A stretch of 64,000 nt of DNA from Schizochytrium sp. TIO01 (GCA_004764695.1 SMSO01000036.1:2542001-2606000); one strand, 5' to 3'. Shown: positions 8,476 through 62,608, counted from the stretch's first letter. Notes: generated from the letters alone by a model not told the origin. Program-made: numbers and translations.

Positions 8476-10332
8476 TCACAGCATTTCCGACATTTCAGGC
8501 TGTGGTTGTGAATCAACGTCGGTTGAGTTTGTCGTATTCGAAGCGGAAGCTTGTGAAGCGAGATCACGAACAATCTTGCGTAGACGGTGCTCCATCTTTC
8601 GTTTTTGGCCAAAACGGTACGGGACAATACAGTTTGCCTCCACCGAACCATTTGCAATTGGCAGGAAGCACGGAAAACGGCTCGAGAAGGCAATTTGACG
8701 CAACGCATCAAAGTTTCGAGCATCAGCGATGGCAAACGTCGCGTCTACATGCTCAGCAATGCCTTGGCATTCCTGCATTGCAACCTTGGAGTCATGGGAT
8801 ACGTTAACAAGTAGAAGTAACACGATACGATGGTGCCGCGAGGCTGAGGCGACAAGCGTCTCGAGGTGGGCTACGTCACGAAGGTGAATGGGTTCGGGCT
8901 TTTTCAGCTCCAGACTTTCGCGTACCTGCTCGACCTGCATACCAAGCTGCTCTTTGCGTGTAGGTCCCAGGATAAGGCGTACTGCCAGCTTCGAGACAGC
9001 CGACACGGCAATCTCCATTGGTGCTAGAAGCATCATTGTCTTGAATCCTGAGAAGAATCCTTGCCACCCTTCTGCTAAATACAGTGCTTGAGCGCTCTGG
9101 AACACATTTTGAGATGCAGGATAGAGCGTGTCGGGTGCAGATATCAGGGTACGCTCACACACTACATGCGGCGGCAAAAATGTGACAAAGGTTGCAAAGA
9201 CCGTCACCGCACCAAGTGCTGGTCCCACAAGACTATCCTCTAGCGCCTGAGCTGTGAGTAATTTATCCGTCAAGTACGACATAAATACAGACACGGCCTG
9301 CGTTGCAACATATGCTGAGAACCCATTATATGTTCTCCATCCGAGCGCTCTAATGCTGCTTTCTATCGGTTGTCCCAGTGCTACAAGCCTAGCGAACGCT
9401 ACCTTCGCAGGATACAACACCACGAGGCGCCTTACTTGGCGTTCCAAGCAAAGTGCTGCACGCCACCACGCGTTGCCGTTGGTCCAGAGAGACTTCGGCC
9501 CAGGGCACAGTTGGTGTTCTCCATGATAAGATAAATGATCTCCAATATATGACTGCGAGTCTTCGCGAGATTTTTGAGGTCCGTGCGAAGGTCCTTTGTG
9601 GGCGTGAGTAGAGGTATCGTGCTCCCACGGGTAGAAGGGTGGGACGAGGGCGGAAATGAGGCTTGTCGCCATGCAGAGTGGTACAGCCTGCATGAAGAGA
9701 GCGTGGTGCCACGGAGATTGAGGCCAATCCGGACAACGGGGTGCCGCCGAGGAGCGGATTCCGAGCATTGCGCGGGTCTCTAGGACCTCGACAGGAGCGT
9801 TTGCAGCAGCGGCGAGGAGAGTATTGAGCAGACGGCGGGCTCGAGAGAGAAACCAAGATTCTCTTCGTTTGGCACGGCTGACGGAGTCGAGGAAACGATT
9901 TACAACAACGACTTTGCGATACGCCTCTCGCCAGCGCGTGCGAGCTCGACGGGAACGACGCCGCAATTTGAGCTCAGGAGCATCGGTGGAGAAGAGGTCC
10001 TCGTCGCTGGGACCCTGCTCGGTAACGCTTCTGGCATCGAGGTCGGAGTCGTCGAGGTCTGAGTGCACGTACCCGCGCGAAAGGTCTTGGCCGAGTCGGC
10101 GCTCTCCCTCTCCATCTTCGTCGTGCTCGCGAGCATCCACGGAGTCCGAGTCTGATTCCGAGTCCGATTCGCCATCGGAGGTGTCCACGCCAAAGAGGCG
10201 CGAGCTGAAGCGCCTGCCTAGCCGCTTGAACTCTGTAAAGCCCATCTTTGCATCGCAGATACGTCTCGCCTCGCGAGCTTTTGAGACTTCTGCTGTTTCC
10301 TCGCTCTTGAATCGATTTCTCTCATTTGTCAT
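8476..10332 (-). CDS. Degenerate mitochondrial-carrier (SLC25)-like membrane protein with a C-terminal thioredoxin-like domain
   Basis: 618-aa ORF. Carrier-like signature 'LPPHVVCERT...LYLAEGWQGFFSG', hydrophobic helices and an acidic N-terminus. The C-terminal ~110 aa resemble a Trx fold ('RIVLLLLV...TFAIADA...RFPCFLPIANG') without CxxC. Confidence 0.5.
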   Translation of the reverse strand: MTNERNRFKSEETAEVSKAREARRICDAKMGFTEFKRLGRRFSSRLFGVDTSDGESDSESDSDSVDAREHDEDGEGERRLGQDLSRGYVHSDLDDSDLDARSVTEQGPSDEDLFSTDAPELKLRRRSRRARTRWREAYRKVVVVNRFLDSVSRAKRRESWFLSRARRLLNTLLAAAANAPVEVLETRAMLGIRSSAAPRCPDWPQSPWHHALFMQAVPLCMATSLISALVPPFYPWEHDTSTHAHKGPSHGPQKSREDSQSYIGDHLSYHGEHQLCPGPKSLWTNGNAWWRAALCLERQVRRLVVLYPAKVAFARLVALGQPIESSIRALGWRTYNGFSAYVATQAVSVFMSYLTDKLLTAQALEDSLVGPALGAVTVFATFVTFLPPHVVCERTLISAPDTLYPASQNVFQSAQALYLAEGWQGFFSGFKTMMLLAPMEIAVSAVSKLAVRLILGPTRKEQLGMQVEQVRESLELKKPEPIHLRDVAHLETLVASASRHHRIVLLLLVNVSHDSKVAMQECQGIAEHVDATFAIADARNFDALRQIAFSSRFPCFLPIANGSVEANCIVPYRFGQKRKMEHRLRKIVRDLASQASASNTTNSTDVDSQPQPEMSEML

Positions 10333-49900: not shown

Positions 49901-50207
49901 GGTCTGAGGGCGTTTGAGTGGACGCGGAGGACCTGTCCTATAGGTATCTTAGCAGATCCTAGTACATTTCGCGAGGCTTGTAAAATCGCCTGCTCTGCCT
50001 TCGAGCGCCAGGAGCAGCAAATCGCGATTGTCATCGATCGTGAGGAAGCGAGCAGAAAGGCTTTGCTCCCGCGAACCTACCGAGGAATATATAGAAAGCA
50101 CCATCAGCAGAGAAGCTGGTGACAAGCAAGCAAGCAAGCAAGCAAACAAGCAATACTAATATCTAATTGAGTTGATTCATTCGTCGTATTACGTTTGATC
50201 AAGCAAC

Positions 50208-53200
50208 ATGACCACTGTGCTCGTGTTCTCTGGCGTCGGCAGCGTGAGCCGTGAGACTGCCAAGCTCGTTAGCGAGCTGCAAGGATTTGAGGTCGTTGAG
50301 GCCGTTCGCGAGCGTCTTGCCAGCGAGCATGGCATCCAGTTGAACGACATTATCGACCGTGTCCAGGAGGACCCTAACTCCCTCTCTGCCAGTGAGGAGA
50401 TCATCGTGCAGCTCGTTGTGCAGCTCAGCGTTGCCCAGATCACCCAAAGTGCTCTTGGTGACGATGAGGAGGTTGTTGCCGTTGGCCACAGCATTGGTGA
50501 GCTCGCCGCCGCCGCTGTGGCAGGTGCCATCAGCATCTCCGATGCCGTGGACGTTGCCGTGCGTCTCGGCGAGGTGACAAAGACCGCTGAGGGCGGCCTG
50601 TACTACGGTAAGATCCAGGTTGGCGACCAAATTGCCTCCGTGAACCAAATTGAGGAGGACGGCAGCCAGGTCGGCGCTGTCATTGTACTCGGTGGTGCCC
50701 AGGACTCTGCGGACCGTACCAAGGTCCACACCGGTTTCCCGTGGCACGCCCAGGTCTACCGCGAGCAGTCCTGGCAGCCGCTCAAGTCTGCACCTGTATC
50801 CAAGCCTCAGCGTCTGCCTTTGGCACTCTCGCTGCTCGGAGGCTTTGCTGATGCTAGCCAGGTTCTCGGTGACGAGTACTGGACCCAATGGACTTACACC
50901 GGCGTAGACCTCGCCAAGGCCCTGCAGCAGGTTCGCGAGAGGTACCCTAAGATCGCTCGCGTTGTAGAGCTCGGAGCCCACCCGATGTTGCAACCTTCTC
51001 TCCGTGCTGTCTTTGGCAGCGACGTTTCTGTCTCGTCTCAGGCTGACCGTCAGCAAGGTCTCCACCTCAGTGCTTGGAAGGAGATTGCACAGGTCAACAA
51101 GGGTTCTGGACTGCTCGACTGCATCCGCAATGCATTCCCGGTCGCGCTCGATGAAGATGCTACCTGGCTTGAGAGTGGTCTTGGCAGCGCGGACATTGTC
51201 CAGGGTGCCGCTAAGCTCGCCAAGCAGGGTGCCTTCCCGGGCCTCAAGCCGCAGGATCTCTACCGCTTTGTTACCCCGCAGGATCTCGTCGCTAGCTACG
51301 GCGTCCGCTTTGGTGCTGATAGCCAGCAGCAGAAGCAATCCAAGACCAACGCTGTTGCAGGCGACCGTGCCGCTGTGGTGATTCGCGCCATGAGCTGCCT
51401 CCTCCCGGCCAACATTAAGTCTCCTGCGCAACTCGCGGCCTTTACGGCATCCCAGGGCGACGCAGTGCGCTTTGACGCCGGCTTCGATGGTGGCAAGCGC
51501 GCTGCTGCCTTTCTCGGCGACATTACCATCGAGTACGCCAAGTTCGGACTCTCCGCTAGCGAGGTGAAGACCATGGATCCTCAACAGGCCCTTGTGCTCT
51601 CTTGTGTTGATAAGCTGTTGCAAGAGCATGAGATTGAGCAGCTCCCCGCTCGCACCGGTGTATACATTGGTGAGTGGAACTCTGAGTTTGAGGGCGACCG
51701 CTCATCGGTCTTTTACCCCACCGGCACCAACGCTAGTCTCGTCGCAGCTCGCGTGAGTCACGTGTACCGCCTCCAGGGTCCTTGCAAGGTGATCAATTCC
51801 GCTTGTGCGTCCTCGCTCGAGGCCGTGCTCGAGGCTCAGCGTGACGTTGCCTCAGGCAAGGTCGACTTTGCAATTGCAGGTGGTGTGAACTTGCTTTGGG
51901 ACCCGTCATTCTCGCAGTGCATGGCCCAGTCTGGATTCCTTGCGCCCGGAGCTCGTTGCCGCAGCTTTGACGCCTCTGCTGACGGCTACGTGCGCTCTGA
52001 GGGTTGTGGTCTTGTGCTGCTTACCCGCAAGAGCGCCGGTGTGCCTTACTATGCTGAGGTTCTCGGAGGTGCCTCCAACCACAACGGAGGTCGCAGCGCC
52101 AGCATCACTGCGCCGAGCCCAATTGCTCAGGGCGAGTGCATTGCCGAAGCCCTTGAAGACGCTCAGATCGAGGCTAAGGATGTTGACTACGTTGAGTGCC
52201 ACGGCACAGGAACCAAGCTTGGTGACCCAATCGAGTGGAGCGCTCTCGCCGGTCTCATCGGTAAGGACCGCGAGGCGGCTAACCCTTGCTACTTGGCCAG
52301 TGTCAAGAGCAACCTCGGACACCTCGAGGCTGCTGCAGGTGTCGTTGGTCTCATCCACGCGGCACTGATCTTGAACAGGCAGGAGGTGCCCCATATGGCG
52401 AACTTTGTCAAGGCTAACCCTCTTCTCGAGAAGTGCGAGGGTCTTCGTCTTGCTGAGAAGGCTAATGTGCGTCCTTCTAAGCCGCTTCAGGTCGCAGGCG
52501 TGTCATCCTTTGGATTCGGAGGTAGCAACGTTCATGTTGTACTCCGTGCCTCTTCTGGAGACCTGCCGGTTGCGCGTGCTCCCGTCGCTACTGCCGTCGC
52601 CTCTTGTAAGAAGAAGGTCTTCGTTTTTGACCGCACTATGAACCGCGCTCTCCCTGTGGTAGCTGAGAAGCCCCAGCAGGTCCAGGTTCAGCCGCAGCAA
52701 GTCCAAGTGAGCCAGGAGGCTGCCAGCATGAAGCAGTCTGTTGTTGAGCAAACCTTCTGGGAGGCTGTCCGCTCTGTGGCCGGCGAAGTGACTCCTGAGG
52801 CACAGATTCTGCAGAGTGGTGTAGATTCTCTCGGCCTTACCGAGCTCTTCCTTCGCATCGAACAGAAGCTTGCTGTTGAGGCCTCTGACCTTAGCGAGTT
52901 CCTCGGCGGAGGATACACTTGGAATGACCTCTGCGCTCGTATTCTGCAATCTGCCAACATTCCCGTTCCCGCAGCTCCTCAGCAGCCTATTGTGCAGCAG
53001 CAGGCTGCTCCTGTGGTGGCCGCACGGCCCAAGAAACAGGCGGCCCGTGCCCCAGAGTCTGAGCACGAGGATGCATCACCGGAGTTTGCCACCTGGGCTG
53101 TGCCGCGTTTTGACGGTATGATCCGTACGTCTCACGTCGGTTCCCTGCCGCGTGCTCGTGAGCCGGAGCAGCAGTACAAGGAGCTGCACAAGATTATTCA

Positions 53201-56042
53201 GCGTCAGCTTGAGATTGGTGTGACTTACATTAACGATGGCGAGGCAGGCCGCATGGACTACGCGACTGCCGCGCTTACCCGCATGAGCGGCTTTGAGGAG
53301 CAGGAGAACCTTCTTGCCCCTCAGCCGCAGGATCTCTCTGATCTTCCTTGCCTTGCTCGCCGCTTCCTCGTACGGTCCGGCCTCATCACTCTCAACAGCA
53401 AGGTCCGTACTTGCAACCCGCACTGTATCGGAGAGATTGCCTACACCGGCCAGAAGGCTCTTGAGAGGGAGCTGCAGACGGTGCGCCGTGCTTTGCAGCA
53501 ATGCAACGCAGGCCTTCCTGGTCAGGCCTTCTGGACGGCGCCCTCGCCCGGTACCCTGGGTATGTTCTTTGAGAACAGCGCTCAGCAGGACTACCCTTCA
53601 TACGACGACTACGTGGCTGCTATCGCCGATGCTCTCCATGTAGAGTACACAACCATCGTGGCTCATGGCTTCATCCTTCAGATTGACTGCCCAGACTTGG
53701 CTATGTCGCGCCACACGCGCTTCAAGAACCTCGGACTCACCGCATGGAAGCGTCTCATGAACATGCACGTGAAGATGCTCAACCGCGCTCTTGATGGCAT
53801 TCCAGCCAACCGCGTGCGTGTGCACGTTTGCTGGGGTAACTATGCGGGATCTCACCACCGCGATGTTAGTGCCACTGAGGTACTCCCGATCGCCTTCAAG
53901 ATCAAGGCTGGTGGTTTTGGCTTCGAGACCGCTAACCACCGCCATAACTCCGACTTCTTGCTCGTTGGCGATGGCCTTGAGCTCCCGCCCAACGTGGACA
54001 TCTACCCTGGTGTCATTGACACCTGCTCCTCTAGCGTAGAGGATCCTGCTGTTGTTTGCGAACGTATTTGCCGTTATGCCAGGCTTGTTGGACCCGAGCG
54101 TGTTGTAGCCAGCACTGACTGTGGCTTCTCCACCACTGCCGAGACTCAAGGCATCCCTGGTGAAGTTGCCCACATGAAGCTCCGCGCCCTTGTGGCTGGT
54201 GCTCGCATGGCATCCCGTATGTTCAACCCCAAGGTGATTCCTTCCTTCGTGTTGCGCCCTGCCATGCGCCGCTTCTACTTTGCTCAGAGCCCGTCTGAGA
54301 CCGTACAACAGACGCTAATCAAGCTCCGCGACGGTCAGACTGAGACTCGCCTCGTGCTCACCCCGAACAACGATGCCGCACTTGTGGCTTCTCACATCCG
54401 CCTCTTTGTGGATGTCCCTGTTCTCTTCGACAACGATGGCGCCGAAGCTTCTGTTGCCTTTGCTGAGGAGGTTAAGAGCTGCCTTGCCGATGGCAAGGTG
54501 CGCCACTCCCCTGCGTACCCTGTCGAATCCATGCCTGACCTCTCTATGGAAGACATGGTCTTCCCCACTGAGGGTACTCCTCGCGAACAGTACGATGTTG
54601 TCGTTGTTGGTGCTGGTATTGTGGGTCTCTTGGCTGCGAAGCGCCTTTTGGACGCTGGTATTGATGTTGTGCTTCTTGAGAAGGCCGATTTTGTTGGTGG
54701 TATTTGGACGACCTTTGCAAACGCAAAGAGCCAGGTCAACAGTTCTGAGGGATCGTACCGTCTTATTCACGAATACCGCGAAAAGGCTAACCGTGACCAC
54801 AGTACTACTGCCGAGGTCCGCGCTGACATGCTTGCCGTCGCTCGCGAGCTGCGTGACCAGGGTCGCATCTTCACCAAGACTTGCGTGACCTACGTGGACC
54901 GCGATCCTGCCTCCAAGTACGTTGTTGACATCGAGGGCGGTATTCGCATCACCTCCACTGGTGTCATTCTTGCTATCAACGACCGTGTCGGTACCCCGCG
55001 TCCCATCATGTGGAAGAACCACGAGAACTACAAGGGCATGATTGTGGATGGCTTTGGTGGCGATGCCGATGCTAAGAACGTTGACTGGGTGGGCAAGCGT
55101 GTTGTTGTTGTTGGTATGGGTGCCTTCGCCGTGGAGAACGCACGTACCGCTCTTGAGCACGGTGCCAAGAACGTTGTCGTTGTTGCCCGTCGCCATGGTA
55201 CCATCTGCCCCAAGTACATTGACTACATCAACTTTGTACACCGTGCCAGTGTCGATGACATTGGTGAGGAAATGAACGCCACTTTCAACAGCAAGAACAT
55301 GTTCTTGTGGCGCAAGCTCTACGAGGCAAGTAACTCTACTCAGCCTGAGACCTGGATGGGCAAGATCAAGCACACTGGTCACACCATCTCTGTGTCTGAT
55401 GTGTGGTTCATTGGCCACTTCCTCGGCAAGCTCGAGACCCGTCTCGGCGAGATCGACCATTTTGTGGAGAACGGAGTGGTTCTCTGTGGCGGCGATCCCG
55501 ACGAAGTGATTGAGGCTGATATTGTGGTGCGCTGCACCGGCTTCGAGCGTAACTCCTCCCTCGTGCCCCAGCTGTCCCCTTACCGTACCATGAACGACAT
55601 CAACTACTTGGACAAGGACCTTATGTACCTCGCTGACGCCTTTATTGATGACGATGCATTCAACTCCTTCTTTGGTTCCAGTGTGCTCGAGATGTCCAAG
55701 TTCTTCATCATGGTGTACCTGCACTTCTTCAAGGGCAACGATGCCAAGGTTCTTGAGGACCATGCTGATACTGACCTGGCCCCCAAGGTCGATGTCCAGT
55801 CTCGTAACTGGACTGATTACATCCGTGGTGCAGAGTTCCTCGTTCAGAATGTGCCCGCTATTCGTGAGCAGGCCAACGAGCTCCTCCGCAGCCGTCGTGA
55901 CGACTTTGTCAACGCCCAGTCTGTTCAGGATTACGTGAACGCCAACAAGCGTGAGTGGAGCGAGCTTCATGAGCTTCTGACTCAGGGCATGATTGGTGAG
56001 GAGTCTGGCATCCAGCTGCCCTACCCTGACTGGAAGTTCTAA
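50208..56042 (+). CDS. Hybrid type I PKS: AT-ACP-KS-ACP-MetE II-like domain-flavin monooxygenase
   Basis: AT 'GHSIGE' (~50484); ACP 'GLGSAD' (~51177); KS 'MDPQQ', 'NSACASS', 'HGTGTKLGDPIE', 'KSNLGHLE', 'SSFGFGGSNVH' (~51370-52550); ACP 'GVDSL' (~52818). MetE-II/CIMS-like 'TSHVGSLPR', 'HVCWGN', 'FETAN', 'STDCGFST' (~53120-54230). FAD/NADPH motifs 'GAGIVG', 'GGIW', 'GMGAFA', 'CTGF' (~54590-56040). Confidence 0.9.
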   Translation: MTTVLVFSGVGSVSRETAKLVSELQGFEVVEAVRERLASEHGIQLNDIIDRVQEDPNSLSASEEIIVQLVVQLSVAQITQSALGDDEEVVAVGHSIGELAAAAVAGAISISDAVDVAVRLGEVTKTAEGGLYYGKIQVGDQIASVNQIEEDGSQVGAVIVLGGAQDSADRTKVHTGFPWHAQVYREQSWQPLKSAPVSKPQRLPLALSLLGGFADASQVLGDEYWTQWTYTGVDLAKALQQVRERYPKIARVVELGAHPMLQPSLRAVFGSDVSVSSQADRQQGLHLSAWKEIAQVNKGSGLLDCIRNAFPVALDEDATWLESGLGSADIVQGAAKLAKQGAFPGLKPQDLYRFVTPQDLVASYGVRFGADSQQQKQSKTNAVAGDRAAVVIRAMSCLLPANIKSPAQLAAFTASQGDAVRFDAGFDGGKRAAAFLGDITIEYAKFGLSASEVKTMDPQQALVLSCVDKLLQEHEIEQLPARTGVYIGEWNSEFEGDRSSVFYPTGTNASLVAARVSHVYRLQGPCKVINSACASSLEAVLEAQRDVASGKVDFAIAGGVNLLWDPSFSQCMAQSGFLAPGARCRSFDASADGYVRSEGCGLVLLTRKSAGVPYYAEVLGGASNHNGGRSASITAPSPIAQGECIAEALEDAQIEAKDVDYVECHGTGTKLGDPIEWSALAGLIGKDREAANPCYLASVKSNLGHLEAAAGVVGLIHAALILNRQEVPHMANFVKANPLLEKCEGLRLAEKANVRPSKPLQVAGVSSFGFGGSNVHVVLRASSGDLPVARAPVATAVASCKKKVFVFDRTMNRALPVVAEKPQQVQVQPQQVQVSQEAASMKQSVVEQTFWEAVRSVAGEVTPEAQILQSGVDSLGLTELFLRIEQKLAVEASDLSEFLGGGYTWNDLCARILQSANIPVPAAPQQPIVQQQAAPVVAARPKKQAARAPESEHEDASPEFATWAVPRFDGMIRTSHVGSLPRAREPEQQYKELHKIIQRQLEIGVTYINDGEAGRMDYATAALTRMSGFEEQENLLAPQPQDLSDLPCLARRFLVRSGLITLNSKVRTCNPHCIGEIAYTGQKALERELQTVRRALQQCNAGLPGQAFWTAPSPGTLGMFFENSAQQDYPSYDDYVAAIADALHVEYTTIVAHGFILQIDCPDLAMSRHTRFKNLGLTAWKRLMNMHVKMLNRALDGIPANRVRVHVCWGNYAGSHHRDVSATEVLPIAFKIKAGGFGFETANHRHNSDFLLVGDGLELPPNVDIYPGVIDTCSSSVEDPAVVCERICRYARLVGPERVVASTDCGFSTTAETQGIPGEVAHMKLRALVAGARMASRMFNPKVIPSFVLRPAMRRFYFAQSPSETVQQTLIKLRDGQTETRLVLTPNNDAALVASHIRLFVDVPVLFDNDGAEASVAFAEEVKSCLADGKVRHSPAYPVESMPDLSMEDMVFPTEGTPREQYDVVVVGAGIVGLLAAKRLLDAGIDVVLLEKADFVGGIWTTFANAKSQVNSSEGSYRLIHEYREKANRDHSTTAEVRADMLAVARELRDQGRIFTKTCVTYVDRDPASKYVVDIEGGIRITSTGVILAINDRVGTPRPIMWKNHENYKGMIVDGFGGDADAKNVDWVGKRVVVVGMGAFAVENARTALEHGAKNVVVVARRHGTICPKYIDYINFVHRASVDDIGEEMNATFNSKNMFLWRKLYEASNSTQPETWMGKIKHTGHTISVSDVWFIGHFLGKLETRLGEIDHFVENGVVLCGGDPDEVIEADIVVRCTGFERNSSLVPQLSPYRTMNDINYLDKDLMYLADAFIDDDAFNSFFGSSVLEMSKFFIMVYLHFFKGNDAKVLEDHADTDLAPKVDVQSRNWTDYIRGAEFLVQNVPAIREQANELLRSRRDDFVNAQSVQDYVNANKREWSELHELLTQGMIGEESGIQLPYPDWKF

Positions 56043-56077
56043 GAAGTCTGTACCTATGAAAACGTTAACCACCAAAT

Positions 56078-56972
56078 GGTAGTGACTATTCAGTATAAAT
56101 GATATATTACAATTATTTAGCTCTTTGTTAAGAAGTCAAGGTTAGATAAAGAAAATGGCATGGCCAAGGAACCACCAAGCTTCAAACGATTCAATACAGT
56201 AAAATACTTCAAACAGATGTTTGGAGCCTTAGCATGTGTGTGCCCTTTGGGTGTTCCTCGGAGGCAAGCGCATATTCGCAAGTGACGATGTTGAACCCAT
56301 TTATGGCTGTGGTTGCAGCGGCCACAAACAACGTAACACTCCAATAGCGTTATCAACGTCAGAGTGTCATCCGCCCCTCCCCCCCCCAAAAAAAATTAAA
56401 ATGCCAAATTGACGATCTCCAGCGCGCCTATCCAGACGCACCTGTCGTATAAAAAGACATCGGTAGCGGGGTCGACTTCAAATGGCCGGGCTTGTGCGCC
56501 CTAGTGGACGACCGAGATTCACCACAAGCTTGCACTTTGGCTCTATGATAGTATCGTGTTATTCCTAAACCTCCCAGATGGTCAAGAAGTTGGCAGGACG
56601 GATTAAATTTAGGCAGCTCGAATGATGTGTCGCTGGCTTCCTTCCGCCAAGCACTCATTCATAAAGCTGGGCTTTCTCCCTGGGTGTAAACTTGTTATTT
56701 GCCGAGAAGATTATACTTCAAAGCATGGAATAAATGTGGGTACCATCCTCGAACAGGAGCACCCAAGGTTTTCAAATGCCCCCTCCTCACCCCGCCAAAA
56801 AAAAAAGCAAATGCGTAGCCGATCGTGACATCCGCCAGAGGCTTCCTCCTGTGCAATCTATTCTCCAAGAGCGTTATTCTAAATTGTCTTTAAGTCATGG
56901 GTTTGTTTCCAACCCGCGCATGGGCCTTAGCCCTACACGTCGTCATCGTAGGAAATGTAAGCTTTATATAGG
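56078..56972 (+). mobile_element. Internally deleted IS607/Fanzor2 relic (non-autonomous)
   Basis: 56078-56511 is colinear with 62534-63004 (left end plus TnpA); 56411-56511 matches 62904-63004 at about 80% by manual count. It then jumps to TnpB/Fanzor C-terminal remnants in shifting frames: 'EIHHKLALWL', 'SFRQALIHKA', 'PGCKLVICREDYTSK', 'KVFKCP', 'CVADRDI'. Boundaries are approximate. Confidence 0.85.
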
Positions 56973-57104
56973 TAAAACTCTAGGTAATACGATTGCAAAG
57001 AATATTTTAGTATATTTACTGTGATTGATATTACCATCTTGTAACCGACTTATGATGATATATATTTTATTCTTTGCAACTTTTGCTCTTTCTCTATCTT
57101 TCTC

Positions 57105-57191
57105 TTTTGCATTTCCAGAGGTTCTCAGGCTGCATTCTTTTATTATAGACTATGTCTTTCTTTTTTGCATTCCAGTGGTTCTCAGGCTGCA
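57105..57191. repeat. Short imperfect direct repeat, 2 x ~30 bp
   Basis: TTTTGCATTTCCAGAGGTTCTCAGGCTGCA (57105-57134) and TTTTGCATTCCAGTGGTTCTCAGGCTGCA (57163-57191). Confidence 0.85.
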
Positions 57192-57846
57192 GTTTCTTTT
57201 TTCCCTCATATACTAAGTATGGTTTAAACAAGATTTTGAAATGACTTTAAACACTTGATCTCACCAAACGTCACGACAAACACCAAAAGAACTTTTGCTT
57301 TCTATATAAAAATATAATATATATAGCACAATCATCATGGAACCTCGAACCTGCCATCCCACAACCAGCATTATTTTGCGCAATTCTTGGTACAAAGAGT
57401 TGATAAGAATGTGGGCTGTATCGCTCACTTCCTTCGTTAGACCCTGGTGAAACAACTTTTGTTTACTTTGCTTTATTTTCTCTTTGTGTTCCTCTATTTT
57501 CTTTCATTTCTAAACATGTGTAAAATTTAAGCTACCCAGAAGGATGAGATATTTTGGGTAATTTCATCCATGATACGAAACTCTCGTTCATATCGGATGA
57601 GCTTGGGTTTGTTTAGAATTCGGAAAAAAAATAAAAATATAAAAAATCATCGCATTGCAAGAACAGCGAGGGGAGAAGGAAGAAAGGAAGAAATAATGAA
57701 AAGATAATGAAATTCTAAGCCTAAGTCACCGTCCACATAGTCCTACAAGGAAGCTTCCGTTACATACATGTTCTAGCACGAAGCCTCGAGCTATTTAAAG
57801 AGATAGGAAGGATGGTGTTGGATGAAGAGGTCTTTACTGTACTTGG

Positions 57847-58800
57847 TTAGTTGAACTCAACAATTTCAATCTGTTCGCCACTCTCAGCAGGCTCGGCGTC
57901 TTCAGCTGTTTCTTGGCCCCTCTTTGACACCGAAGGTACCATTCGACGCAACATGGCCCTGAACTGCCCCTTGGACCCCAGGTCGATAATCACCTTGGGT
58001 CTCTCGTCGTCCACAATCGTCTGCAAGATAGTTTCCCACTGCACCGTACATTCTACCTGCTTCGCAAGCGTGTTAAGCACGTCGTCTTCCTCTGTATACA
58101 GCATTCCTGTAGCATTGGAGAACACATCGACATTCTTCCTGCCTTTTGCAGGTTTTACCTTGCCCTTGAGCTGTCGAATCGCCTCTGCTCCGTCCTGCAT
58201 GAGCTCAGTATGAAATGCACCCACGAGTTCCTCTCTAGACTGAGCTTTCTCAGCAATTTCTGGTACCCATTTCACGCCTCGCATCGCCTCCGCGGGGCCA
58301 GCAGCGACACGACATCCTGGAAAGAGTCTAATCGCGATGCTGACGCCGTTTTGCTGTTCAATTTTGGTCTCATCCTGCACGCCAAGCAGCGTGACCATAG
58401 ATCCTGGCCGTGCTTCACATGCCTTTTGCATAGCCTCTGCACGAGCTTTGAGCACCTTGAGGGTGTCGCGAAGACTAAGTCTGCCGGCACCTGCGAGTGC
58501 AGGGACCTCACCAAGTGAAAAGCCTGCGAAGTAGGTGGCCTCTGAACCAGTTAGAAGCTCTCCTTGCTCGCGACGGAGTCGATCCAGGAGGTCCAAAAGT
58601 CTCACACCGAGAGCGAGCTGCCCATAGTAGGTGCTTTGTGCAAGCTGCGCAGCTGTGAGCCGTGTGATGTCAACCTTGAGCTCGTCAAGAGCGCATGAGG
58701 CAACACGGCTTGAGGTGAGAGGAGCAGCGGCATCGCTTGCGAGACGTGTGCCTTGGCCAGGCAGCAGGACATAAACCACGCGGCCGTCTGAGGAAGACAT
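57847..58800 (-). CDS. Stand-alone acyltransferase, malonyl-CoA:ACP transacylase (FabD/trans-AT)-like
   Basis: 'LLPGQG', catalytic 'GFSLGE', malonyl-binding Arg in 'LKARAEAMQ', 'GAFHTELM' and 'LAKQVECTVQWE'. No obvious N-terminal targeting extension. Confidence 0.88.
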   Translation of the reverse strand: MSSSDGRVVYVLLPGQGTRLASDAAAPLTSSRVASCALDELKVDITRLTAAQLAQSTYYGQLALGVRLLDLLDRLRREQGELLTGSEATYFAGFSLGEVPALAGAGRLSLRDTLKVLKARAEAMQKACEARPGSMVTLLGVQDETKIEQQNGVSIAIRLFPGCRVAAGPAEAMRGVKWVPEIAEKAQSREELVGAFHTELMQDGAEAIRQLKGKVKPAKGRKNVDVFSNATGMLYTEEDDVLNTLAKQVECTVQWETILQTIVDDERPKVIIDLGSKGQFRAMLRRMVPSVSKRGQETAEDAEPAESGEQIEIVEFN

Positions 58801-59860: not shown

Positions 59861-62341
59861 CTAATATTTAGATTTGTCCCGGTGAGCCCAACACTTGGTG
59901 CCTCTTTGAGCAGGTTTATCACAGTCAATCTCCTGGCAAACCCTTCCGCCACCGTGCGCCCAGCACTTGAGCCCATTCTGCGCTGCAGTCAGGCAGCCTG
60001 GCTCTGTGCACCTCCGCCCACCACCATGCGTTGTACACTTGCCTCCCATTTTGGCCGGGGTATCACACCCTGGGTGCGAGCATCGTTTTCCGCCGCCGTG
60101 AGCAACGCAAAAGCCGCTGGAGTCTGCCACCTTTCCACAGCCTGGCGTTTCGCATCGAGCGCCACCTCCATGAGCAATACACTTTCCACCCTTTTGAGCA
60201 GATTTTCGGCATCCAGGCTCATCACAGCGCTTTCCGCCACCATGGGCAATGCACTTTCCACCTGACTTTGCACTTTTTTCGCAACCTGGTTCTTGACAGC
60301 GATCCCCTCCTCCATGAGCTTTGCATTTACCGCCCTTTTGTGCAGCCTTTTCACAGCCAGGTTCTTGGCAGCGATCTCCGCCACCATGGGCGACGCATTT
60401 ACCTCCTTTTTTAGCATTTTTCCTGCACCCAGGATGTTCACAACGGCCGACACCACCATGATGTTTGCACTTTTTATTCCTCCCTGCCGTGACATTGTCG
60501 CATCCACTCTCTTGACATCTGTTGCCCCCACCATGCGTTACACACTTACCCCCTTGCTTGGCAGAATTTCTACAGCCGGGCTCTTCACAACGTTTACCAC
60601 CGCCATGCGCAATGCAAAGACCTCCACCTTGATCCTTCTTGCCGCAACCAGGTTCTAAGCATATTCTCTTTCCTCTCCAAACGTGGACTCTCTTCCCTGG
60701 AGTTGCATTTGTGACGTTGTCCTCGACTTCGGAAGGAGCTGTATTTGATGTAGGTTGCATTTTATTAGTAGAATGTACCACAGATGATGATGAAGAAAAA
60801 GGCACCGGCGTGGACTTTGGAGTACTTGTGCTACTTGACCGTGTCTTGCGAGTTATTTCACCAGAAGCAACTTTCGATGGAGCCGACTGACCGTCACGAT
60901 CATCTTCATCTTCAACTGGACTCTCACTTTCTTTATTTTCACTGTTGATGCTAAACTCACTTCCACTTGCGCTGATGCCATGATCTAGTTCTTGCTCACG
61001 TTCAAGCCCTGCTTCATCAGCAACATCGCGCAAAGATTGCGGAGCAGCCTTTCGCCTAGGTTGTTTTCGAAGAGTTTTCGAAGAGGCTGTGCCAGAGGGA
61101 CCATCAATATCGTCTTCAGCATAAGCTTCGCTTTCACCTCTGCCACGTTTCTCATTCAAACGATGCATTGATCTTGTATTTTCTGTGCGCTTATCACTAC
61201 TATCACTTTCTGAGGATAAGGCGATATTACGCTTGCCTTTGTTTCCTTTCTTCTTGTCGTTCTTCCTCGACTTTGGCGTTTCTGCATGTTCCTCATGGAC
61301 ATCATTGTTCTCTGCTACACTTTCTTGGCTTTCGTCACTCTCTATGTCGTCATTCTCAGAACGACGTGAACTATGCCAATGGCGATGATGTGAAGTCAAT
61401 GCTGATCGGCTTGTTCTTGAAGAGTGAAGTTCAGATTCTTCATCTGAATCCTCGCTTAAATCTGATTGTCTCACCCTGCGTCGATCCGATTTGCCTCTTC
61501 GTCTCCCAGCCATCTCTGTGCCATGGCTATTACTGCTTCTGCTACTGTCTTCTTCATCAGAGGAATCGACAGCATCGTGATTTCGGCGACGAGTAGACTT
61601 TTTAATACTCCTCTTCTTACTCTTCTTTGTTTTCAAATATTTGCCGTGCTTCGGAATCTTTTCATGTTGGGATATGTCTTCGTCCACTTTTATGTTCTCC
61701 AGCTCCTCGTCATCTTCAGAATTTCGAGAGTTTTCATCGTCCTCATTTTCATCTTCGAAGTCCGCGTGGTTACGAGTCGATTTCTTCCTTTTTGAACGTT
61801 TGGAGGACTTTTCTCTGCTTCTGTAACGCTTTGCTCTTCTCTCAGGGTCTGAGCTCTCAAAGTCGGACTCCTCATCATGTTCTTCATGGTCTTTCGCCTC
61901 ATCTGCTTCGGACTCCTCGCTGTGCGAGTGATCTTGCTGGGGGCGAGAGATCTTTTGTCCATATCTATGTTGTTTCCTGTGCCTTTTCTTTGTCCTTTTC
62001 AGGCTTTGAGACTTTCCTGTGTCCGACACAGACTGTTCATCATCATCATCTTCTTCTTCTTCCTCTTCTTCGTCCTCGAAATTGTCAACATTATTGAAGT
62101 CTTCGCTTTTTCTAATCCGTTCCAAGCGGCGACGACGACGTCTGAAAGGCGTACTTTCGTGTTTGCGTCGCTTAAGACGCCTCTGACGATGCCCGTCAAG
62201 ATCTTCCTCTTCCTCCGAGGACCCTTGCGAGTCTGCGCTGTTGGCCTCATTCACAGAGCTTGAGACCACCACATCTTCTTCGCCGGCCGAAAGCTCTTTG
62301 TGTCGCCTCCTCGTAGATCGTTTTCTGGGGTCTTTGGCCAT
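59861..62341 (-). CDS. Protein with 11 tandem Cys/His 'CxxxGC...CxxHGGG' zinc-finger repeats (WRKY19-like type) and a long charged low-complexity N-terminus
   Basis: Eleven ~24-aa C-x4-C-x9/10-C-x2-H repeats at about 59875-60670. Arg/Lys clusters suggest nuclear localisation. Start taken at MAKDP (62341); the ORF extends to 62515. Confidence 0.85.
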   Translation of the reverse strand: MAKDPRKRSTRRRHKELSAGEEDVVVSSSVNEANSADSQGSSEEEEDLDGHRQRRLKRRKHESTPFRRRRRRLERIRKSEDFNNVDNFEDEEEEEEEDDDDEQSVSDTGKSQSLKRTKKRHRKQHRYGQKISRPQQDHSHSEESEADEAKDHEEHDEESDFESSDPERRAKRYRSREKSSKRSKRKKSTRNHADFEDENEDDENSRNSEDDEELENIKVDEDISQHEKIPKHGKYLKTKKSKKRSIKKSTRRRNHDAVDSSDEEDSSRSSNSHGTEMAGRRRGKSDRRRVRQSDLSEDSDEESELHSSRTSRSALTSHHRHWHSSRRSENDDIESDESQESVAENNDVHEEHAETPKSRKNDKKKGNKGKRNIALSSESDSSDKRTENTRSMHRLNEKRGRGESEAYAEDDIDGPSGTASSKTLRKQPRRKAAPQSLRDVADEAGLEREQELDHGISASGSEFSINSENKESESPVEDEDDRDGQSAPSKVASGEITRKTRSSSTSTPKSTPVPFSSSSSVVHSTNKMQPTSNTAPSEVEDNVTNATPGKRVHVWRGKRICLEPGCGKKDQGGGLCIAHGGGKRCEEPGCRNSAKQGGKCVTHGGGNRCQESGCDNVTAGRNKKCKHHGGVGRCEHPGCRKNAKKGGKCVAHGGGDRCQEPGCEKAAQKGGKCKAHGGGDRCQEPGCEKSAKSGGKCIAHGGGKRCDEPGCRKSAQKGGKCIAHGGGARCETPGCGKVADSSGFCVAHGGGKRCSHPGCDTPAKMGGKCTTHGGGRRCTEPGCLTAAQNGLKCWAHGGGRVCQEIDCDKPAQRGTKCWAHRDKSKY

Positions 62342-62608
62342 GTTATTGCCCTCTGCAACTGCGAAGCTTCTTTGTTGTTCTCCCCTCAGAGCCGCGGCAG
62401 CACTTCGCCTGTTGCCAGCGCAGCAAGGAAAGTACTTGCTTCTTCGATAATCTAGTTTGCCAAAGAGACTTTGTGTGGAATGATGTTTGAGACTCGACGG
62501 TATAACAAAAACCATTAAAAGTTCTTATATTTCGTAGTGTTTGTTTCATATACATCATATATTATGCTTATTTAGGTCTTTGATAAGAAGTGGAGGTTAG
62601 GTAAGAAA

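What the first reader, a model, noticed from the sequence alone, without database searches (positions are those of the whole stretch)
50208..58800. Candidate new two-gene biosynthetic system: single-module PKS fused to a MetE-like Zn-thiol enzyme and a flavin monooxygenase, plus a convergent trans-acyltransferase
Seen in sequence: one intronless 1944-aa ORF with AT-ACP-KS-ACP-MetE II-like-FMO domains. It has an intact KS Cys/His/His triad and two ACP serines, but no recognisable KR, DH, ER, TE or extender AT. A free FabD-like AT faces it 1.8 kb away. Established: AT-less modules are loaded by trans-ATs; CIMS-family domains (MetE, epoxyalkane:CoM transferase) activate thiols on Zn for alkylation; Baeyer-Villiger-type flavin oxygenases act on ACP-bound beta-ketoacyl chains in trans-AT PKSs (PedG, OocK). 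Inference: a starter is loaded, extended once with malonyl, then oxygenated and coupled to a thiol, giving a small sulfur- or oxygen-modified metabolite. I do not know of a described enzyme with this architecture.
Basis: partly seen in the sequence, partly recalled or inferred. Interest (0 to 1): 0.92.

Follow-up and report, generated by a model that had tools for sequence, protein, structure and literature searches.

The report
PKS-fused B12-independent methionine synthase
The 1,944-residue gene is real, but it belongs to the already published "MetE-fusion" family linked to making methionine without vitamin B12, not to a new secondary-metabolite pathway; how its polyketide-type and flavin parts supply the methyl group is still unknown.

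Summary
There is one intronless 1,944-aa ORF (50208-56042, +) with loading AT, ACP, KS (Cys/His/His), ACP, a short MetE-like Zn domain and a class-B flavoprotein monooxygenase domain. A malonyl-type free AT lies convergent 1.8 kb away. Four independent public assemblies carry the ORF colinear.

The interpretation mostly fails. This architecture is already published as the "MetE-like complex" of Schizochytrium (Ma 2022) and as the "MetE-fusion" B12-independent methionine synthase (Rao 2024, which lists Hondaea, 69% identical to this ORF).

New here:
- About 43 bacterial genomes, mostly Desulfobacterota, encode the same parts as adjacent genes: AT-ACP-KS-ACP, core MetE and flavoprotein, often followed by a PPTase.
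- A SAM riboswitch sits directly upstream in 20 of these loci, which places the module in methionine metabolism.
- The homocysteine-binding and Zn residues are invariant. The nearest solved structure is MesD, an O2-dependent folate-free methionine synthase.
- This genome has MetH but no canonical MetE.
- The AT adjacency is conserved in Hondaea.

My inferred mechanism (about 0.25-0.3): acetyl plus malonyl-ACP gives acetoacetyl-ACP. Oxygen insertion gives methyl-malonyl-ACP ester. The methyl passes to Zn-bound homocysteine, regenerating malonyl-ACP.

The gene is already known; the mechanism is open and testable.

The parts
50208..56042 (+). Whole ORF, 1944 aa plus stop: MetE-fusion-type multidomain protein
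   Evidence: 100% identical protein on an independent 6,055-nt contig (P0001); colinear contigs from 4 studies
50208..51077 (+). Loading acyltransferase domain (res ~1-290): GHSIGE Ser95, W179-H180; the malonyl-binding Arg is not conserved
   Evidence: Pfam PF00698 5.7e-13 on res 6-128, SAT 2.7e-5; invariant columns in A1
51090..51332 (+). ACP1 (res ~295-375), phosphopantetheine Ser327
   Evidence: Pfam PP-binding E 0.05; G324/S327 invariant in 9 family members; own HMM hits bacterial homologues at about 1e-20
51360..52742 (+). Ketosynthase plus C-terminal extension (res 385-845), Cys533/His~666/His705
   Evidence: PF00109 1.8e-40, PF02801 4.3e-39, PF16197 2.3e-8; A1
52743..52982 (+). ACP2 (res 846-925), GVDSL Ser874
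   Evidence: PF00550 3.3e-7; G871/D873/S874/L875 invariant
53100..54242 (+). Core-MetE-like Zn domain (res 965-1345): Hcy ligands S979, E1012, D1160; Zn ligands H1206, C1208, E1240, C1305; no folate-binding barrel
   Evidence: NCBIfam PRK04326 2.7e-16; PDB 1ypx 5.7e-7; profile vs MesD 3RPD 6.9e-13 with ligand residues aligned; invariance in A1 and A6
54330..56039 (+). Class-B flavoprotein monooxygenase domain with a ~90-aa N-terminal extension shared with the bacterial stand-alone proteins (res 1375-1944). GxGxxG at 1468-1473, GMGAFA at 1636-1641. BVMO fingerprint is degenerate
   Evidence: 46-50% identity to ~615-aa bacterial proteins; AF2 model pLDDT 71, Foldseek PAMO/STMO E ~1e-19
57847..58800 (-). 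Free malonyl-CoA:ACP transacylase-like gene (317 aa), convergent; candidate priming AT for ACP2
   Evidence: MdcH 1e-29, FabD 2e-26; human MCAT 2c2n 9.6e-21 with Ser/Arg/His motifs; orthologue adjacent to the fusion gene in Hondaea; a more canonical FabD lies elsewhere in the genome

Best explanation
Core claim (about 0.8). The ORF is a thraustochytrid member of the published MetE-fusion family. This is a cobalamin- and folate-independent methionine synthase system in which a core-MetE domain methylates Zn-bound homocysteine. The fused ACP, KS, AT and flavoprotein parts make or present the methyl donor.

Shown here:
- The domain set and all catalytic, Zn and homocysteine residues are present.
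- Bacteria keep the same parts as a compact gene cluster, often under a SAM riboswitch.
- This genome has MetH but no canonical MetE.

Taken from papers: orthologues are induced without B12 and repressed by methionine or B12.

Proposed mechanism (inference, about 0.25-0.3):
1. The Arg-less AT loads acetyl onto ACP1.
2. The KS condenses it with malonyl-ACP2 to give acetoacetyl-ACP2 plus CO2.
3. The flavoprotein inserts oxygen on the distal side of the ketone, as OocK/PedG-type enzymes do, giving the methyl ester of malonyl-ACP2.
4. The Zn-homocysteine thiolate takes the methyl by SN2. This releases methionine and regenerates malonyl-ACP2.

Net reaction: acetyl-CoA + O2 + NADPH + homocysteine -> methionine + CO2.

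The neighbouring free AT would only prime or re-prime ACP2 with malonyl. This cycle needs no TE, KR, DH, ER or cis extender AT.
For: Family membership: full-length 69% identity to Hondaea 'polyketide synthase' P0002, and the same architecture in Amoebophrya, Polarella and Symbiodinium. Rao 2024 names these as MetE-fusion homologues with KS and AT extensions. Ma 2022 describes the Schizochytrium orthologue, 4.2-fold up without cobalamin and down with Met, as the 'only MetE domain' in that genome.

Methionine context: the bacterial AT-ACP-KS-ACP, core-MetE and flavoprotein genes are adjacent in ~43 loci. Rfam SAM riboswitch lies directly upstream in 7 of 10 loci, and in 20 full plus 1 truncated of the loci by my own CM, with no hit elsewhere in 959 kb.

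Active site: S979, E1012, D1160 and H1206, C1208, E1240, C1305 are invariant. They align to the ligands of MesD 3RPD.

Genome content: G000 has no PF01717 hit at E<=0.01 but has MetH. In one near-complete Desulfatitalea MAG the cluster copy is the only detectable PF01717 or PF02574 protein.

Carrier use: an Sfp-type PPTase follows the flavoprotein gene in 11 loci. Haptophytes keep ACP-MetE-flavoprotein as a unit.

For the cycle: the AT lacks the malonyl Arg; no release or reductive domains are present; the flavoprotein's nearest solved relatives are BVMOs and a PKS-embedded ACP-acting oxygenase, 8odw; MesD/MesX is a precedent for an O2-dependent methyl source from central metabolism.
Against: - No enzymology or genetics exists for any member, and the donor is unknown in both papers.
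- The bacterial hosts are mostly Desulfobacterota, usually anaerobes, which fits poorly with an O2-dependent step.
- The BVMO fingerprint FxGxxxHxxxW is degenerate (His->Asp). The PAMO Asp66 position is an invariant Gln, and I could not locate the catalytic Arg. Baeyer-Villiger chemistry is therefore not established.
- Methyl migration and a carboxylate methyl ester as enzymatic methyl donor have no direct enzymatic precedent that I know of.
- Haptophyte members lack KS and AT, so these would have to act in trans.
- 27 of 35 cluster-bearing bacterial genomes also have MetH-type domains, so the cluster is not their sole route.
- Only about half of the bacterial loci carry the riboswitch.
Confidence: 0.7

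Rival explanations
1. It is a methionine synthase of the MetE-fusion family, but the methyl donor is something else. Candidates are S-methylmethionine, glycine betaine, DMSP or a flavin-N5-bound one-carbon unit made without O2. The AT-ACP-KS part then has a different, unknown supporting role.
For: Rao 2024 suggests alternative methylated nutrients as donors. The anaerobic lifestyle of most bacterial hosts argues against an oxygenase step. The BVMO motifs are degenerate. Haptophyte members lack KS and AT.
Against: It does not explain why AT-ACP-KS-ACP is strictly linked to core MetE and the flavoprotein in ~43 bacterial loci and fused to them in several eukaryotic lineages. It also does not explain why ACP stays fused even in haptophytes, or why a PPTase is in the cluster.
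Confidence: 0.3
2. One reading: a single-module trans-AT PKS makes a small sulfur- or oxygen-modified secondary metabolite. A beta-ketoacyl chain is oxygenated and coupled to a thiol, with the neighbouring AT as the dedicated extender AT.
For: Intact KS triad, two ACPs, an AT-less module, a flavin oxygenase fold, a Zn-thiol domain. AT adjacency is conserved in Hondaea.
Against: SAM-riboswitch control in bacteria. B12- and Met-responsive expression and replacement of MetH in published orthologues. Complete conservation of the amino-acid (homocysteine) ligands. No release domain. Wide distribution as a single conserved module in primary-metabolism style across dinoflagellates, haptophytes, labyrinthulids and Desulfobacterota.
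Confidence: 0.08
3. The reading of Ma et al. 2022: the AT and KS domains interact with the PUFA synthase and cause it to release EPA instead of DHA/DPA. The MetE part merely couples expression to B12 status.
For: EPA rose from 1.26% to 7.63% when the gene was induced by cobalamin omission. Their trees place its AT and KS near PfaC-type domains.
Against: The evidence is correlative only, with no knockout. B12 starvation perturbs methylation and lipid metabolism globally, and the PUFA synthase transcripts fell 75-85% at the same time. The same module occurs in Desulfobacterota under SAM riboswitches and in haptophytes without AT and KS. Neither fits a PUFA-release role.
Confidence: 0.05
4. A homocysteine-consuming enzyme rather than a methionine synthase. 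The Zn-thiolate attacks the ACP thioester or an oxidised carbon, giving an S-acyl- or S-alkyl-homocysteine (for example an N-3-oxoacyl-homocysteine thiolactone-like product). It would be induced when homocysteine accumulates.
For: Homocysteine ligands are conserved. Induction when MetH is starved of B12 also raises homocysteine. There is no TE, so thiol attack could serve as release.
Against: SAM riboswitches normally switch on genes that restore Met/SAM, not genes that drain its precursor. P. antarctica grows without B12 while expressing this protein in place of MetH.
Confidence: 0.07

Closest known systems
MetE-fusion protein of Phaeocystis antarctica and homologues (Rao et al. 2024, PNAS, PMC10861871)
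   Same: Same ACP, core-MetE, Pyr_redox_2/CzcO order and the same Zn ligands. The paper states that dinophyte, heterokont, chlorophyte and labyrinthulid members extend N-terminally with KS and AT, and it names Hondaea, whose protein is 69% identical to this ORF.
   Different: The haptophyte prototype lacks AT-ACP-KS. The paper leaves the accessory domains and the methyl donor unexplained. It reports prokaryotic homologues as MetE-domain only. Here the bacterial neighbours supply all the other parts.
'MetE-like complex' of Schizochytrium sp. CCTCC M209059 (Ma et al. 2022, Commun Biol, PMC9734096)
   Same: AT + KS + MetE + CzcO flavoprotein in one thraustochytrid gene. The Zn ligands H233/C235/E267/C330 of their domain numbering match H1206/C1208/E1240/C1305 here, with the same H-C-E spacing.
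   Different: Probably an orthologue from another strain: the last ligand is offset by 2 residues. They did not note the two ACPs and they interpret the gene as a regulator of EPA release.
MesD/MesX folate-independent methionine synthase (Price et al. 2021, PMC7857596; PDB 3RPD)
   Same: A core MetE without a folate barrel. It is the nearest solved structure to this domain (6.9e-13), and its Ser/Glu/Asp and Zn ligands align. It needs a partner protein and O2, and takes its methyl from central metabolism.
   Different: The partner there is DUF1852 (MesX), not a PKS-like protein plus a class-B flavoprotein. MesD is reported only from aerobic bacteria, whereas this cluster is mainly in Desulfobacterota.
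OocK/PedG-type oxygenases of trans-AT PKSs (Meoded et al. 2018, PMC6174933) and the LbmA Ox-ACP didomain (PDB 8odw)
   Same: Class-B flavin monooxygenases that act on ACP-tethered substrates. By my knowledge of that paper, OocK inserts oxygen distal to the beta-keto group to give a malonyl ester. 8odw is among the solved relatives (1.5e-10).
   Different: Sequence relation is remote (~17% identity in Foldseek). The canonical BVMO motifs are not kept. No biochemical data exist for this family.
BioC/BioH pimelate pathway intermediate, malonyl-ACP methyl ester (my own knowledge)
   Same: The proposed donor is chemically the same species that BioC makes.
   Different: BioC makes it with SAM as a disguise for fatty-acid synthase. 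Here it would be made oxidatively from acetoacetyl-ACP and used as a methyl donor. That is unproven.

Membership tests
MetE-fusion family (Rao et al. 2024) | Order ACP, core MetE (~320-380 aa), FAD/NAD(P) Pyr_redox_2/CzcO domain in one protein | tested here: met
   ACP2 858-894, MetE-like 965-1345, flavoprotein 1375-1944
MetE-fusion family (Rao et al. 2024) | N-terminal KS and AT extension in non-haptophyte members | tested here: met
   AT 1-290 and KS 389-843; the same in Hondaea, Amoebophrya, Polarella and Symbiodinium homologues
MetE-fusion family (Rao et al. 2024) | Close homology to named members | tested here: met
   69% identity over 100% of length to the Hondaea fermentalgiana protein GBG23799.1; 39% over the C-terminal half to an Emiliania huxleyi carrier-domain protein
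MetE-fusion family (Rao et al. 2024) | Expression induced by B12 scarcity, replacing MetH | not testable with these tools
   Published for P. antarctica and the Schizochytrium orthologue. The runs found here are contigs without conditions.
Core (folate-independent) methionine synthases, MesD-like | Zn ligands His, Cys, Glu, Cys | tested here: met
   H1206, C1208, E1240, C1305 invariant in A1 and A6; aligned to VHICYG and TNCG of 3RPD
Core (folate-independent) methionine synthases, MesD-like | Homocysteine ligands (E. coli Ser433, Glu484, Asp599; 3RPD Ser22, Glu73, Asp188) | tested here: met
   S979 (GSLPR), E1012 (NDGE), D1160 (QIDCPD) invariant and aligned
Core (folate-independent) methionine synthases, MesD-like | Absence of the N-terminal folate-binding barrel | tested here: met
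   No Meth_synt_1 or second barrel; the domain is ~380 aa
Core (folate-independent) methionine synthases, MesD-like | Converts homocysteine to methionine | not testable with these tools
   Needs complementation or an assay
Type I modular PKS (trans-AT style module) | KS Cys-His-His and carrier-domain serines | tested here: met
   C533, H~666, H705; S327 and S874
Type I modular PKS (trans-AT style module) | Chain processing or release domains (KR/DH/ER/TE) giving a released polyketide | tested here: not met
   None found by Pfam or NCBIfam in the protein, nor among conserved neighbours of the bacterial cluster
Type I Baeyer-Villiger monooxygenases | Two Rossmann motifs and the class-B fold | tested here: met
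   GAGIVG 1468-1473, GMGAFA 1636-1641; Foldseek PAMO 8e-20, TM 0.50-0.53 on a model of pLDDT 71
Type I Baeyer-Villiger monooxygenases | Fingerprint FxGxxxHxxxW(P/D) and the active-site Asp (PAMO D66) | tested here: not met
   The sequence is YKGMIVDGFGG (His->Asp, Trp->Gly). The D66 position is an invariant Gln1509.
FabD/MCAT (the free AT) | Catalytic Ser, malonyl-binding Arg and His | tested here: met
   GFSLGE, RAEAMQ and GAFHT aligned to human MCAT 2c2n at 9.6e-21
FabD/MCAT (the free AT) | Being the genome's housekeeping (only) MCAT | tested here: not met
   A second, more canonical FabD lies at G000:C32:1470763-1471662 (FabD 1e-60 against 2e-26)
SAM-I riboswitch regulon (bacterial cluster) | Rfam RF00162 match above the gathering score directly upstream of the operon | tested here: met
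   7 of 10 loci at 48.5-62.9 bits; 20 full plus 1 truncated of the loci with CM R1. None in the loci where the MetE gene is inverted.

The most novel reading that the evidence does not exclude
The module is a self-regenerating, ACP-tethered methyl generator. A PKS-type condensation followed by flavin-dependent oxygen insertion turns the methyl carbon of acetyl-CoA into the S-methyl of methionine, through methyl-malonyl-ACP ester. No folate, cobalamin or SAM is needed. This would be a new route of one-carbon supply and the first polyketide-synthase machinery used in core amino-acid synthesis. It would be shared by Desulfobacterota (as an operon) and by major marine protist groups (as a fusion).
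Probability: 0.27. Interest if true: 0.92.

Novelty: already known. Interest (0 to 1): 0.6.

Why it matters
Vitamin B12 dependence of marine protists is usually predicted from the presence or absence of canonical MetE. The MetE-fusion family overturns that prediction for haptophytes and probably for others, thraustochytrids of industrial interest included.

Its methyl donor is the central open question. The same question stands for MesD/MesX. Three results here turn it into a set of direct experiments:
- The same parts form a SAM-riboswitch-controlled operon in bacteria.
- The carrier domain and a PPTase travel with it.
- The architecture fits a closed acetyl-to-methyl cycle.

The experiments are acetate labelling, E. 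coli complementation with a small bacterial operon, and intact-protein MS.

For genome annotation, these genes should stop being called 'polyketide synthase' or counted as secondary-metabolite clusters.

Tried and rejected
The test for a trans KS in haptophytes therefore could not be made.
- The ESM Atlas look-up of the N-terminal half returned only generic bacterial AT+KS clusters.
- Four paper searches gave nothing on this architecture. Two later searches found no paper with a donor mechanism.
- Idea that the cluster replaces missing MetH/MetE in bacteria: only partly true. 8 of 35 genomes lack PF02574, and these are MAGs, so absence is weak.
- Idea that thraustochytrid genes nest inside Desulfobacterota (recent transfer): the flavoprotein tree shows bacteria as one clan next to the thraustochytrid/Amoebophrya-like clade. 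It is unrooted, so the direction is unresolved.
- Riboswitch in the second bacterial arrangement (MetE gene inverted, PPTase downstream): none at the gathering or E<=1 thresholds.
- Assembly chimera: rejected.
- Whether the laid contigs are RNA is only the tool's guess. Their 6.0-6.4 kb sizes and shared ends fit an unspliced mRNA but do not prove it.


Full report
**1. Observation**

The window holds one uninterrupted ORF, 50208..56042 on the + strand, of 1944 aa. It is richer in G+C (0.55-0.59) than its flanks (about 0.40-0.46).

Pfam and NCBIfam give these domains:
- an N-terminal acyltransferase, with only residues 6-128 matching PF00698;
- a weak carrier domain near residue 330;
- a full ketosynthase (389-733) with its C-terminal extension;
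- a clear carrier domain (858-894);
- a short MetE-like region (NCBIfam methionine synthase PRK04326 at 2.7e-16; Pfam Meth_synt_2 only at E 0.011);
- a two-Rossmann flavoprotein whose best named relatives are Baeyer-Villiger monooxygenases.

No KR, DH, ER, TE or second AT appears.

An alignment of nine full-length relatives (A1) shows which residues are invariant:
- AT Ser95 and His180;
- ACP1 Ser327;
- KS Cys533 and His705 (the HGTGT His at ~666 is present in all rows except P0014, which is disrupted there);
- ACP2 Ser874;
- the four MetE Zn ligands H1206, C1208, E1240, C1305;
- both dinucleotide motifs of the flavoprotein.

The position of FabD's malonyl-binding Arg is not conserved in the fused AT. 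This is what loading ATs for monocarboxylic starters look like (the last point is my own knowledge).

The convergent ORF 57847..58800 (-) is a malonyl-type transacylase. Its best solved relative is human mitochondrial MCAT at 9.6e-21, and the Ser, Arg and His motifs are in place.

**2. The ORF is not an artefact**

An identical 1944-aa protein exists on an independent 6,055-nt contig (P0001). Twenty-three public runs from ten studies hold at least 97% of the sampled words of the stretch. In four runs from four studies, one contig each (6,008-6,356 nt) lies colinear on 50158-56119 with 2-6 mismatches, no gaps and no joints.

These contigs are barely longer than the ORF, and they come from assemblies of 20-36 Mb against a 64-Mb genome. 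That fits an unspliced mRNA, but the RNA label is only the tool's guess.

**3. What it is: relatives**

The same full architecture occurs in Hondaea fermentalgiana (69% identity over the whole length), other thraustochytrid-like sequences, Amoebophrya, Polarella and Symbiodinium. The C-terminal ACP-MetE-flavoprotein half also occurs alone, for example in Emiliania huxleyi. The window therefore comes from a thraustochytrid. Its assembly has 64.07 Mb in 37 contigs.

**4. Prior literature**

Two papers already describe this protein.
- Ma et al. 2022 (PMC9734096) name the Schizochytrium gene "MetE-like". They list AT, KS, MetE and CzcO-flavoprotein domains. They report that it is the only MetE domain in the genome, is 4.2-fold induced without cobalamin and is lowered by methionine. 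From correlation alone they propose that it makes the PUFA synthase release EPA.
- Rao et al. 2024 (PMC10861871) define the "MetE-fusion" family in Phaeocystis antarctica. The protein replaces MetH when B12 is scarce, and the alga grows without B12. They note that homologues in dinophytes, heterokonts, chlorophytes and labyrinthulids, Hondaea included, extend N-terminally with KS and AT domains. They leave the role of the extra domains and the methyl donor open, and they state that prokaryotic homologues have only the MetE domain.

No later paper in the library gives a mechanism.

**5. New evidence from bacteria**

The flavoprotein half has stand-alone bacterial homologues of about 615 aa at 46-50% identity, including the ~90-residue N-terminal extension. 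A scan of one genome per bacterial species returned 52 loci. Almost all are Desulfobacterota MAGs, with a few Spirochaetota and Myxococcota.

I built HMMs from the domain blocks of A1 and searched these loci:
- In about 43 loci a 930-1000-aa gene with AT-ACP-KS-ACP lies immediately upstream (KS about 1e-150, AT about 1e-65).
- A ~378-aa core-MetE gene (about 1e-135) sits between that gene and the flavoprotein gene. It is on the same strand in about half of the loci and inverted in the rest.

Clustering of all neighbouring ORFs shows that only these three are conserved. The one addition is an Sfp-type phosphopantetheinyl transferase directly downstream in 11 loci. The eukaryotic protein is thus the fused form of a compact bacterial gene set. 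This is strong evidence that the four activities work together on carrier-bound substrates.

**6. The bacterial module belongs to methionine metabolism**

Rfam finds a SAM-I riboswitch above its gathering score 50-350 nt upstream of the AT-ACP-KS-ACP gene in 7 of 10 loci. A covariance model built from these seven finds 20 full and one truncated copy across all loci. Every copy is at that position and strand, with no other hit in 959 kb and none in the window. All but one lie in loci where the three genes are co-directional. The inverted-MetE arrangement has no recognisable riboswitch.

Genome content:
- The window's own genome has no Meth_synt_2 match at E<=0.01 anywhere but has MetH.
- Among five cluster-bearing bacterial genomes, the cluster copy is the only PF01717-like gene in three. 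In a Desulfatitalea MAG with a 5.66-Mb contig there is also no MetH-type homocysteine domain.
- Over 35 genomes, 27 do have such domains, so the cluster is usually an additional route.

**7. The MetE-like domain looks catalytically complete for homocysteine**

A profile of the window domain plus nine bacterial proteins (A6) finds PDB 3RPD as the best solved relative (6.9e-13). Price et al. 2021 identify 3RPD as MesD, a folate- and cobalamin-independent methionine synthase that needs a partner protein and oxygen.

The residues that bind the amino acid in 3RPD (Ser22, Glu73, Asp188) align with the invariant S979, E1012 and D1160. The Zn motif aligns with HVCWGN and TDCGF.

**8. The flavoprotein**

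Its nearest solved relatives by sequence and by fold are type I BVMOs: STMO and PAMO at 1e-15, and Foldseek at 8e-20 with TM about 0.5, on a model of mean pLDDT 71. A PKS-embedded oxygenase that acts on an ACP-bound substrate (8odw) is also among them.

The BVMO fingerprint is not kept (YKGMIVDGFGG), and PAMO's Asp66 position is an invariant Gln. Membership in the canonical BVMO family therefore fails on motifs, although the class-B fold holds.

**9. The neighbouring AT**

- It is not the genome's only FabD-like gene. A more canonical one (FabD model 1e-60 against 2e-26) lies on another contig.
- Its close relatives are few: one in Hondaea (63%) and one metagenomic (50%). After that, identity drops below 40%.
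- The Hondaea protein is GBG23800.1 and the Hondaea fusion protein is GBG23799.1, both on a 762,420-bp contig. The pair is therefore adjacent in two genera.

This supports, but does not prove, a role as the malonyl-priming AT. Bacteria have no AT in the cluster and could use FabD.

**10. Mechanism**

What is shown or published supports the core claim at about 0.8: the protein is a MetE-fusion methionine synthase system.

My proposal for the donor is inference, at about 0.25-0.3:
1. Acetyl is loaded on ACP1.
2. KS condenses it with malonyl-ACP2 to give acetoacetyl-ACP2.
3. The flavoprotein inserts oxygen distal to the ketone. OocK does this on beta-ketoacyl-ACPs, and acetone monooxygenase makes methyl acetate (both from my own knowledge). 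The product is methyl-malonyl-ACP2 ester.
4. The Zn-homocysteine thiolate removes the methyl. This gives methionine and regenerates malonyl-ACP2.

What the cycle explains:
- the missing TE, reductive domains and extender AT;
- the Arg-less loading AT;
- the two carriers;
- the ACP-MetE-flavoprotein unit that survives in haptophytes;
- the PPTase in the cluster;
- the parallel with O2-dependent MesD/MesX.

Its weak points:
- the mostly anaerobic bacterial hosts;
- the degenerate BVMO motifs;
- the lack of an enzymatic precedent for a carboxyl methyl ester as methyl donor;
- the absence of KS and AT in haptophytes.

**11. Phylogeny**

A tree of the flavoprotein domain (44 rows, LG+G4, SH-aLRT) puts the bacteria on one side of a fully supported branch. 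The thraustochytrid and Amoebophrya-like sequences form the clade next to them, and the dinoflagellate/haptophyte sequences form a separate clade. The tree is unrooted, so I make no claim about donor or direction. Half of the bacterial rows were left out to save time.

**12. Verdict**

- The secondary-metabolite interpretation and the novelty claim are not supported.
- The trans-AT idea is partly supported.
- The gene is an already known kind.
- What is new here is the bacterial operon with its SAM riboswitch, the conserved AT adjacency, and a concrete, testable hypothesis for the methyl donor.

**13. Tools that were not available**

Noticed in passing
G000:C31:7535909-7536733 (L062): The genome's MetH activation domain (PF02965, 4e-104) lies in an open frame of 2,867 aa. 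That is far longer than a normal MetH (~1,250 aa), so MetH may itself be fused to something else in this organism.
   Followed up: no
window 59861-62515 (-): An 884-aa ORF with ten copies of the 24-residue Zf_WRKY19 zinc finger (1.9e-68), directly beyond the free AT.
   Followed up: no
L018 11765-12439, L049 11709-12464 and 9 further loci: An Sfp-type 4'-phosphopantetheinyl transferase gene follows the flavoprotein gene in 11 bacterial loci, mostly those where the core-MetE gene is inverted.
   Followed up: partly
L018 6085-9823 (also L025, L026): In three Desulfocapsaceae-like loci, a TRAP transporter (DctP/Q/M) and a PEP-mutase/isocitrate-lyase-family gene are inserted between the core-MetE and flavoprotein genes.
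   Followed up: no
L010-L055, position ~8500-9900 of each locus: The core-MetE gene lies on the same strand as its neighbours in about half of the bacterial loci and on the opposite strand in the rest. Only the co-directional type (plus L016) carries the SAM riboswitch.
   Followed up: partly
G002:C4:41885-43006 (-): A second core-MetE-like frame (PF01717 1.3e-35) with one in-frame TGA in a delta-proteobacterial MAG. It could be a selenoprotein or a broken gene.
   Followed up: no
L049 17186-17258 (-): A c-di-GMP-I riboswitch (48.8 bits), 5 kb downstream of the cluster and unrelated to it.
   Followed up: no
window 50120-50157: read laying skipped these 38 letters just upstream of the start codon as a repeat, and all four contigs are laid only from 50158.
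   Followed up: no
window 56078-56972: An earlier first-reader note places a deleted IS607/Fanzor2 copy in the gap between the ORF and the free AT. I did not examine it.
   Followed up: no
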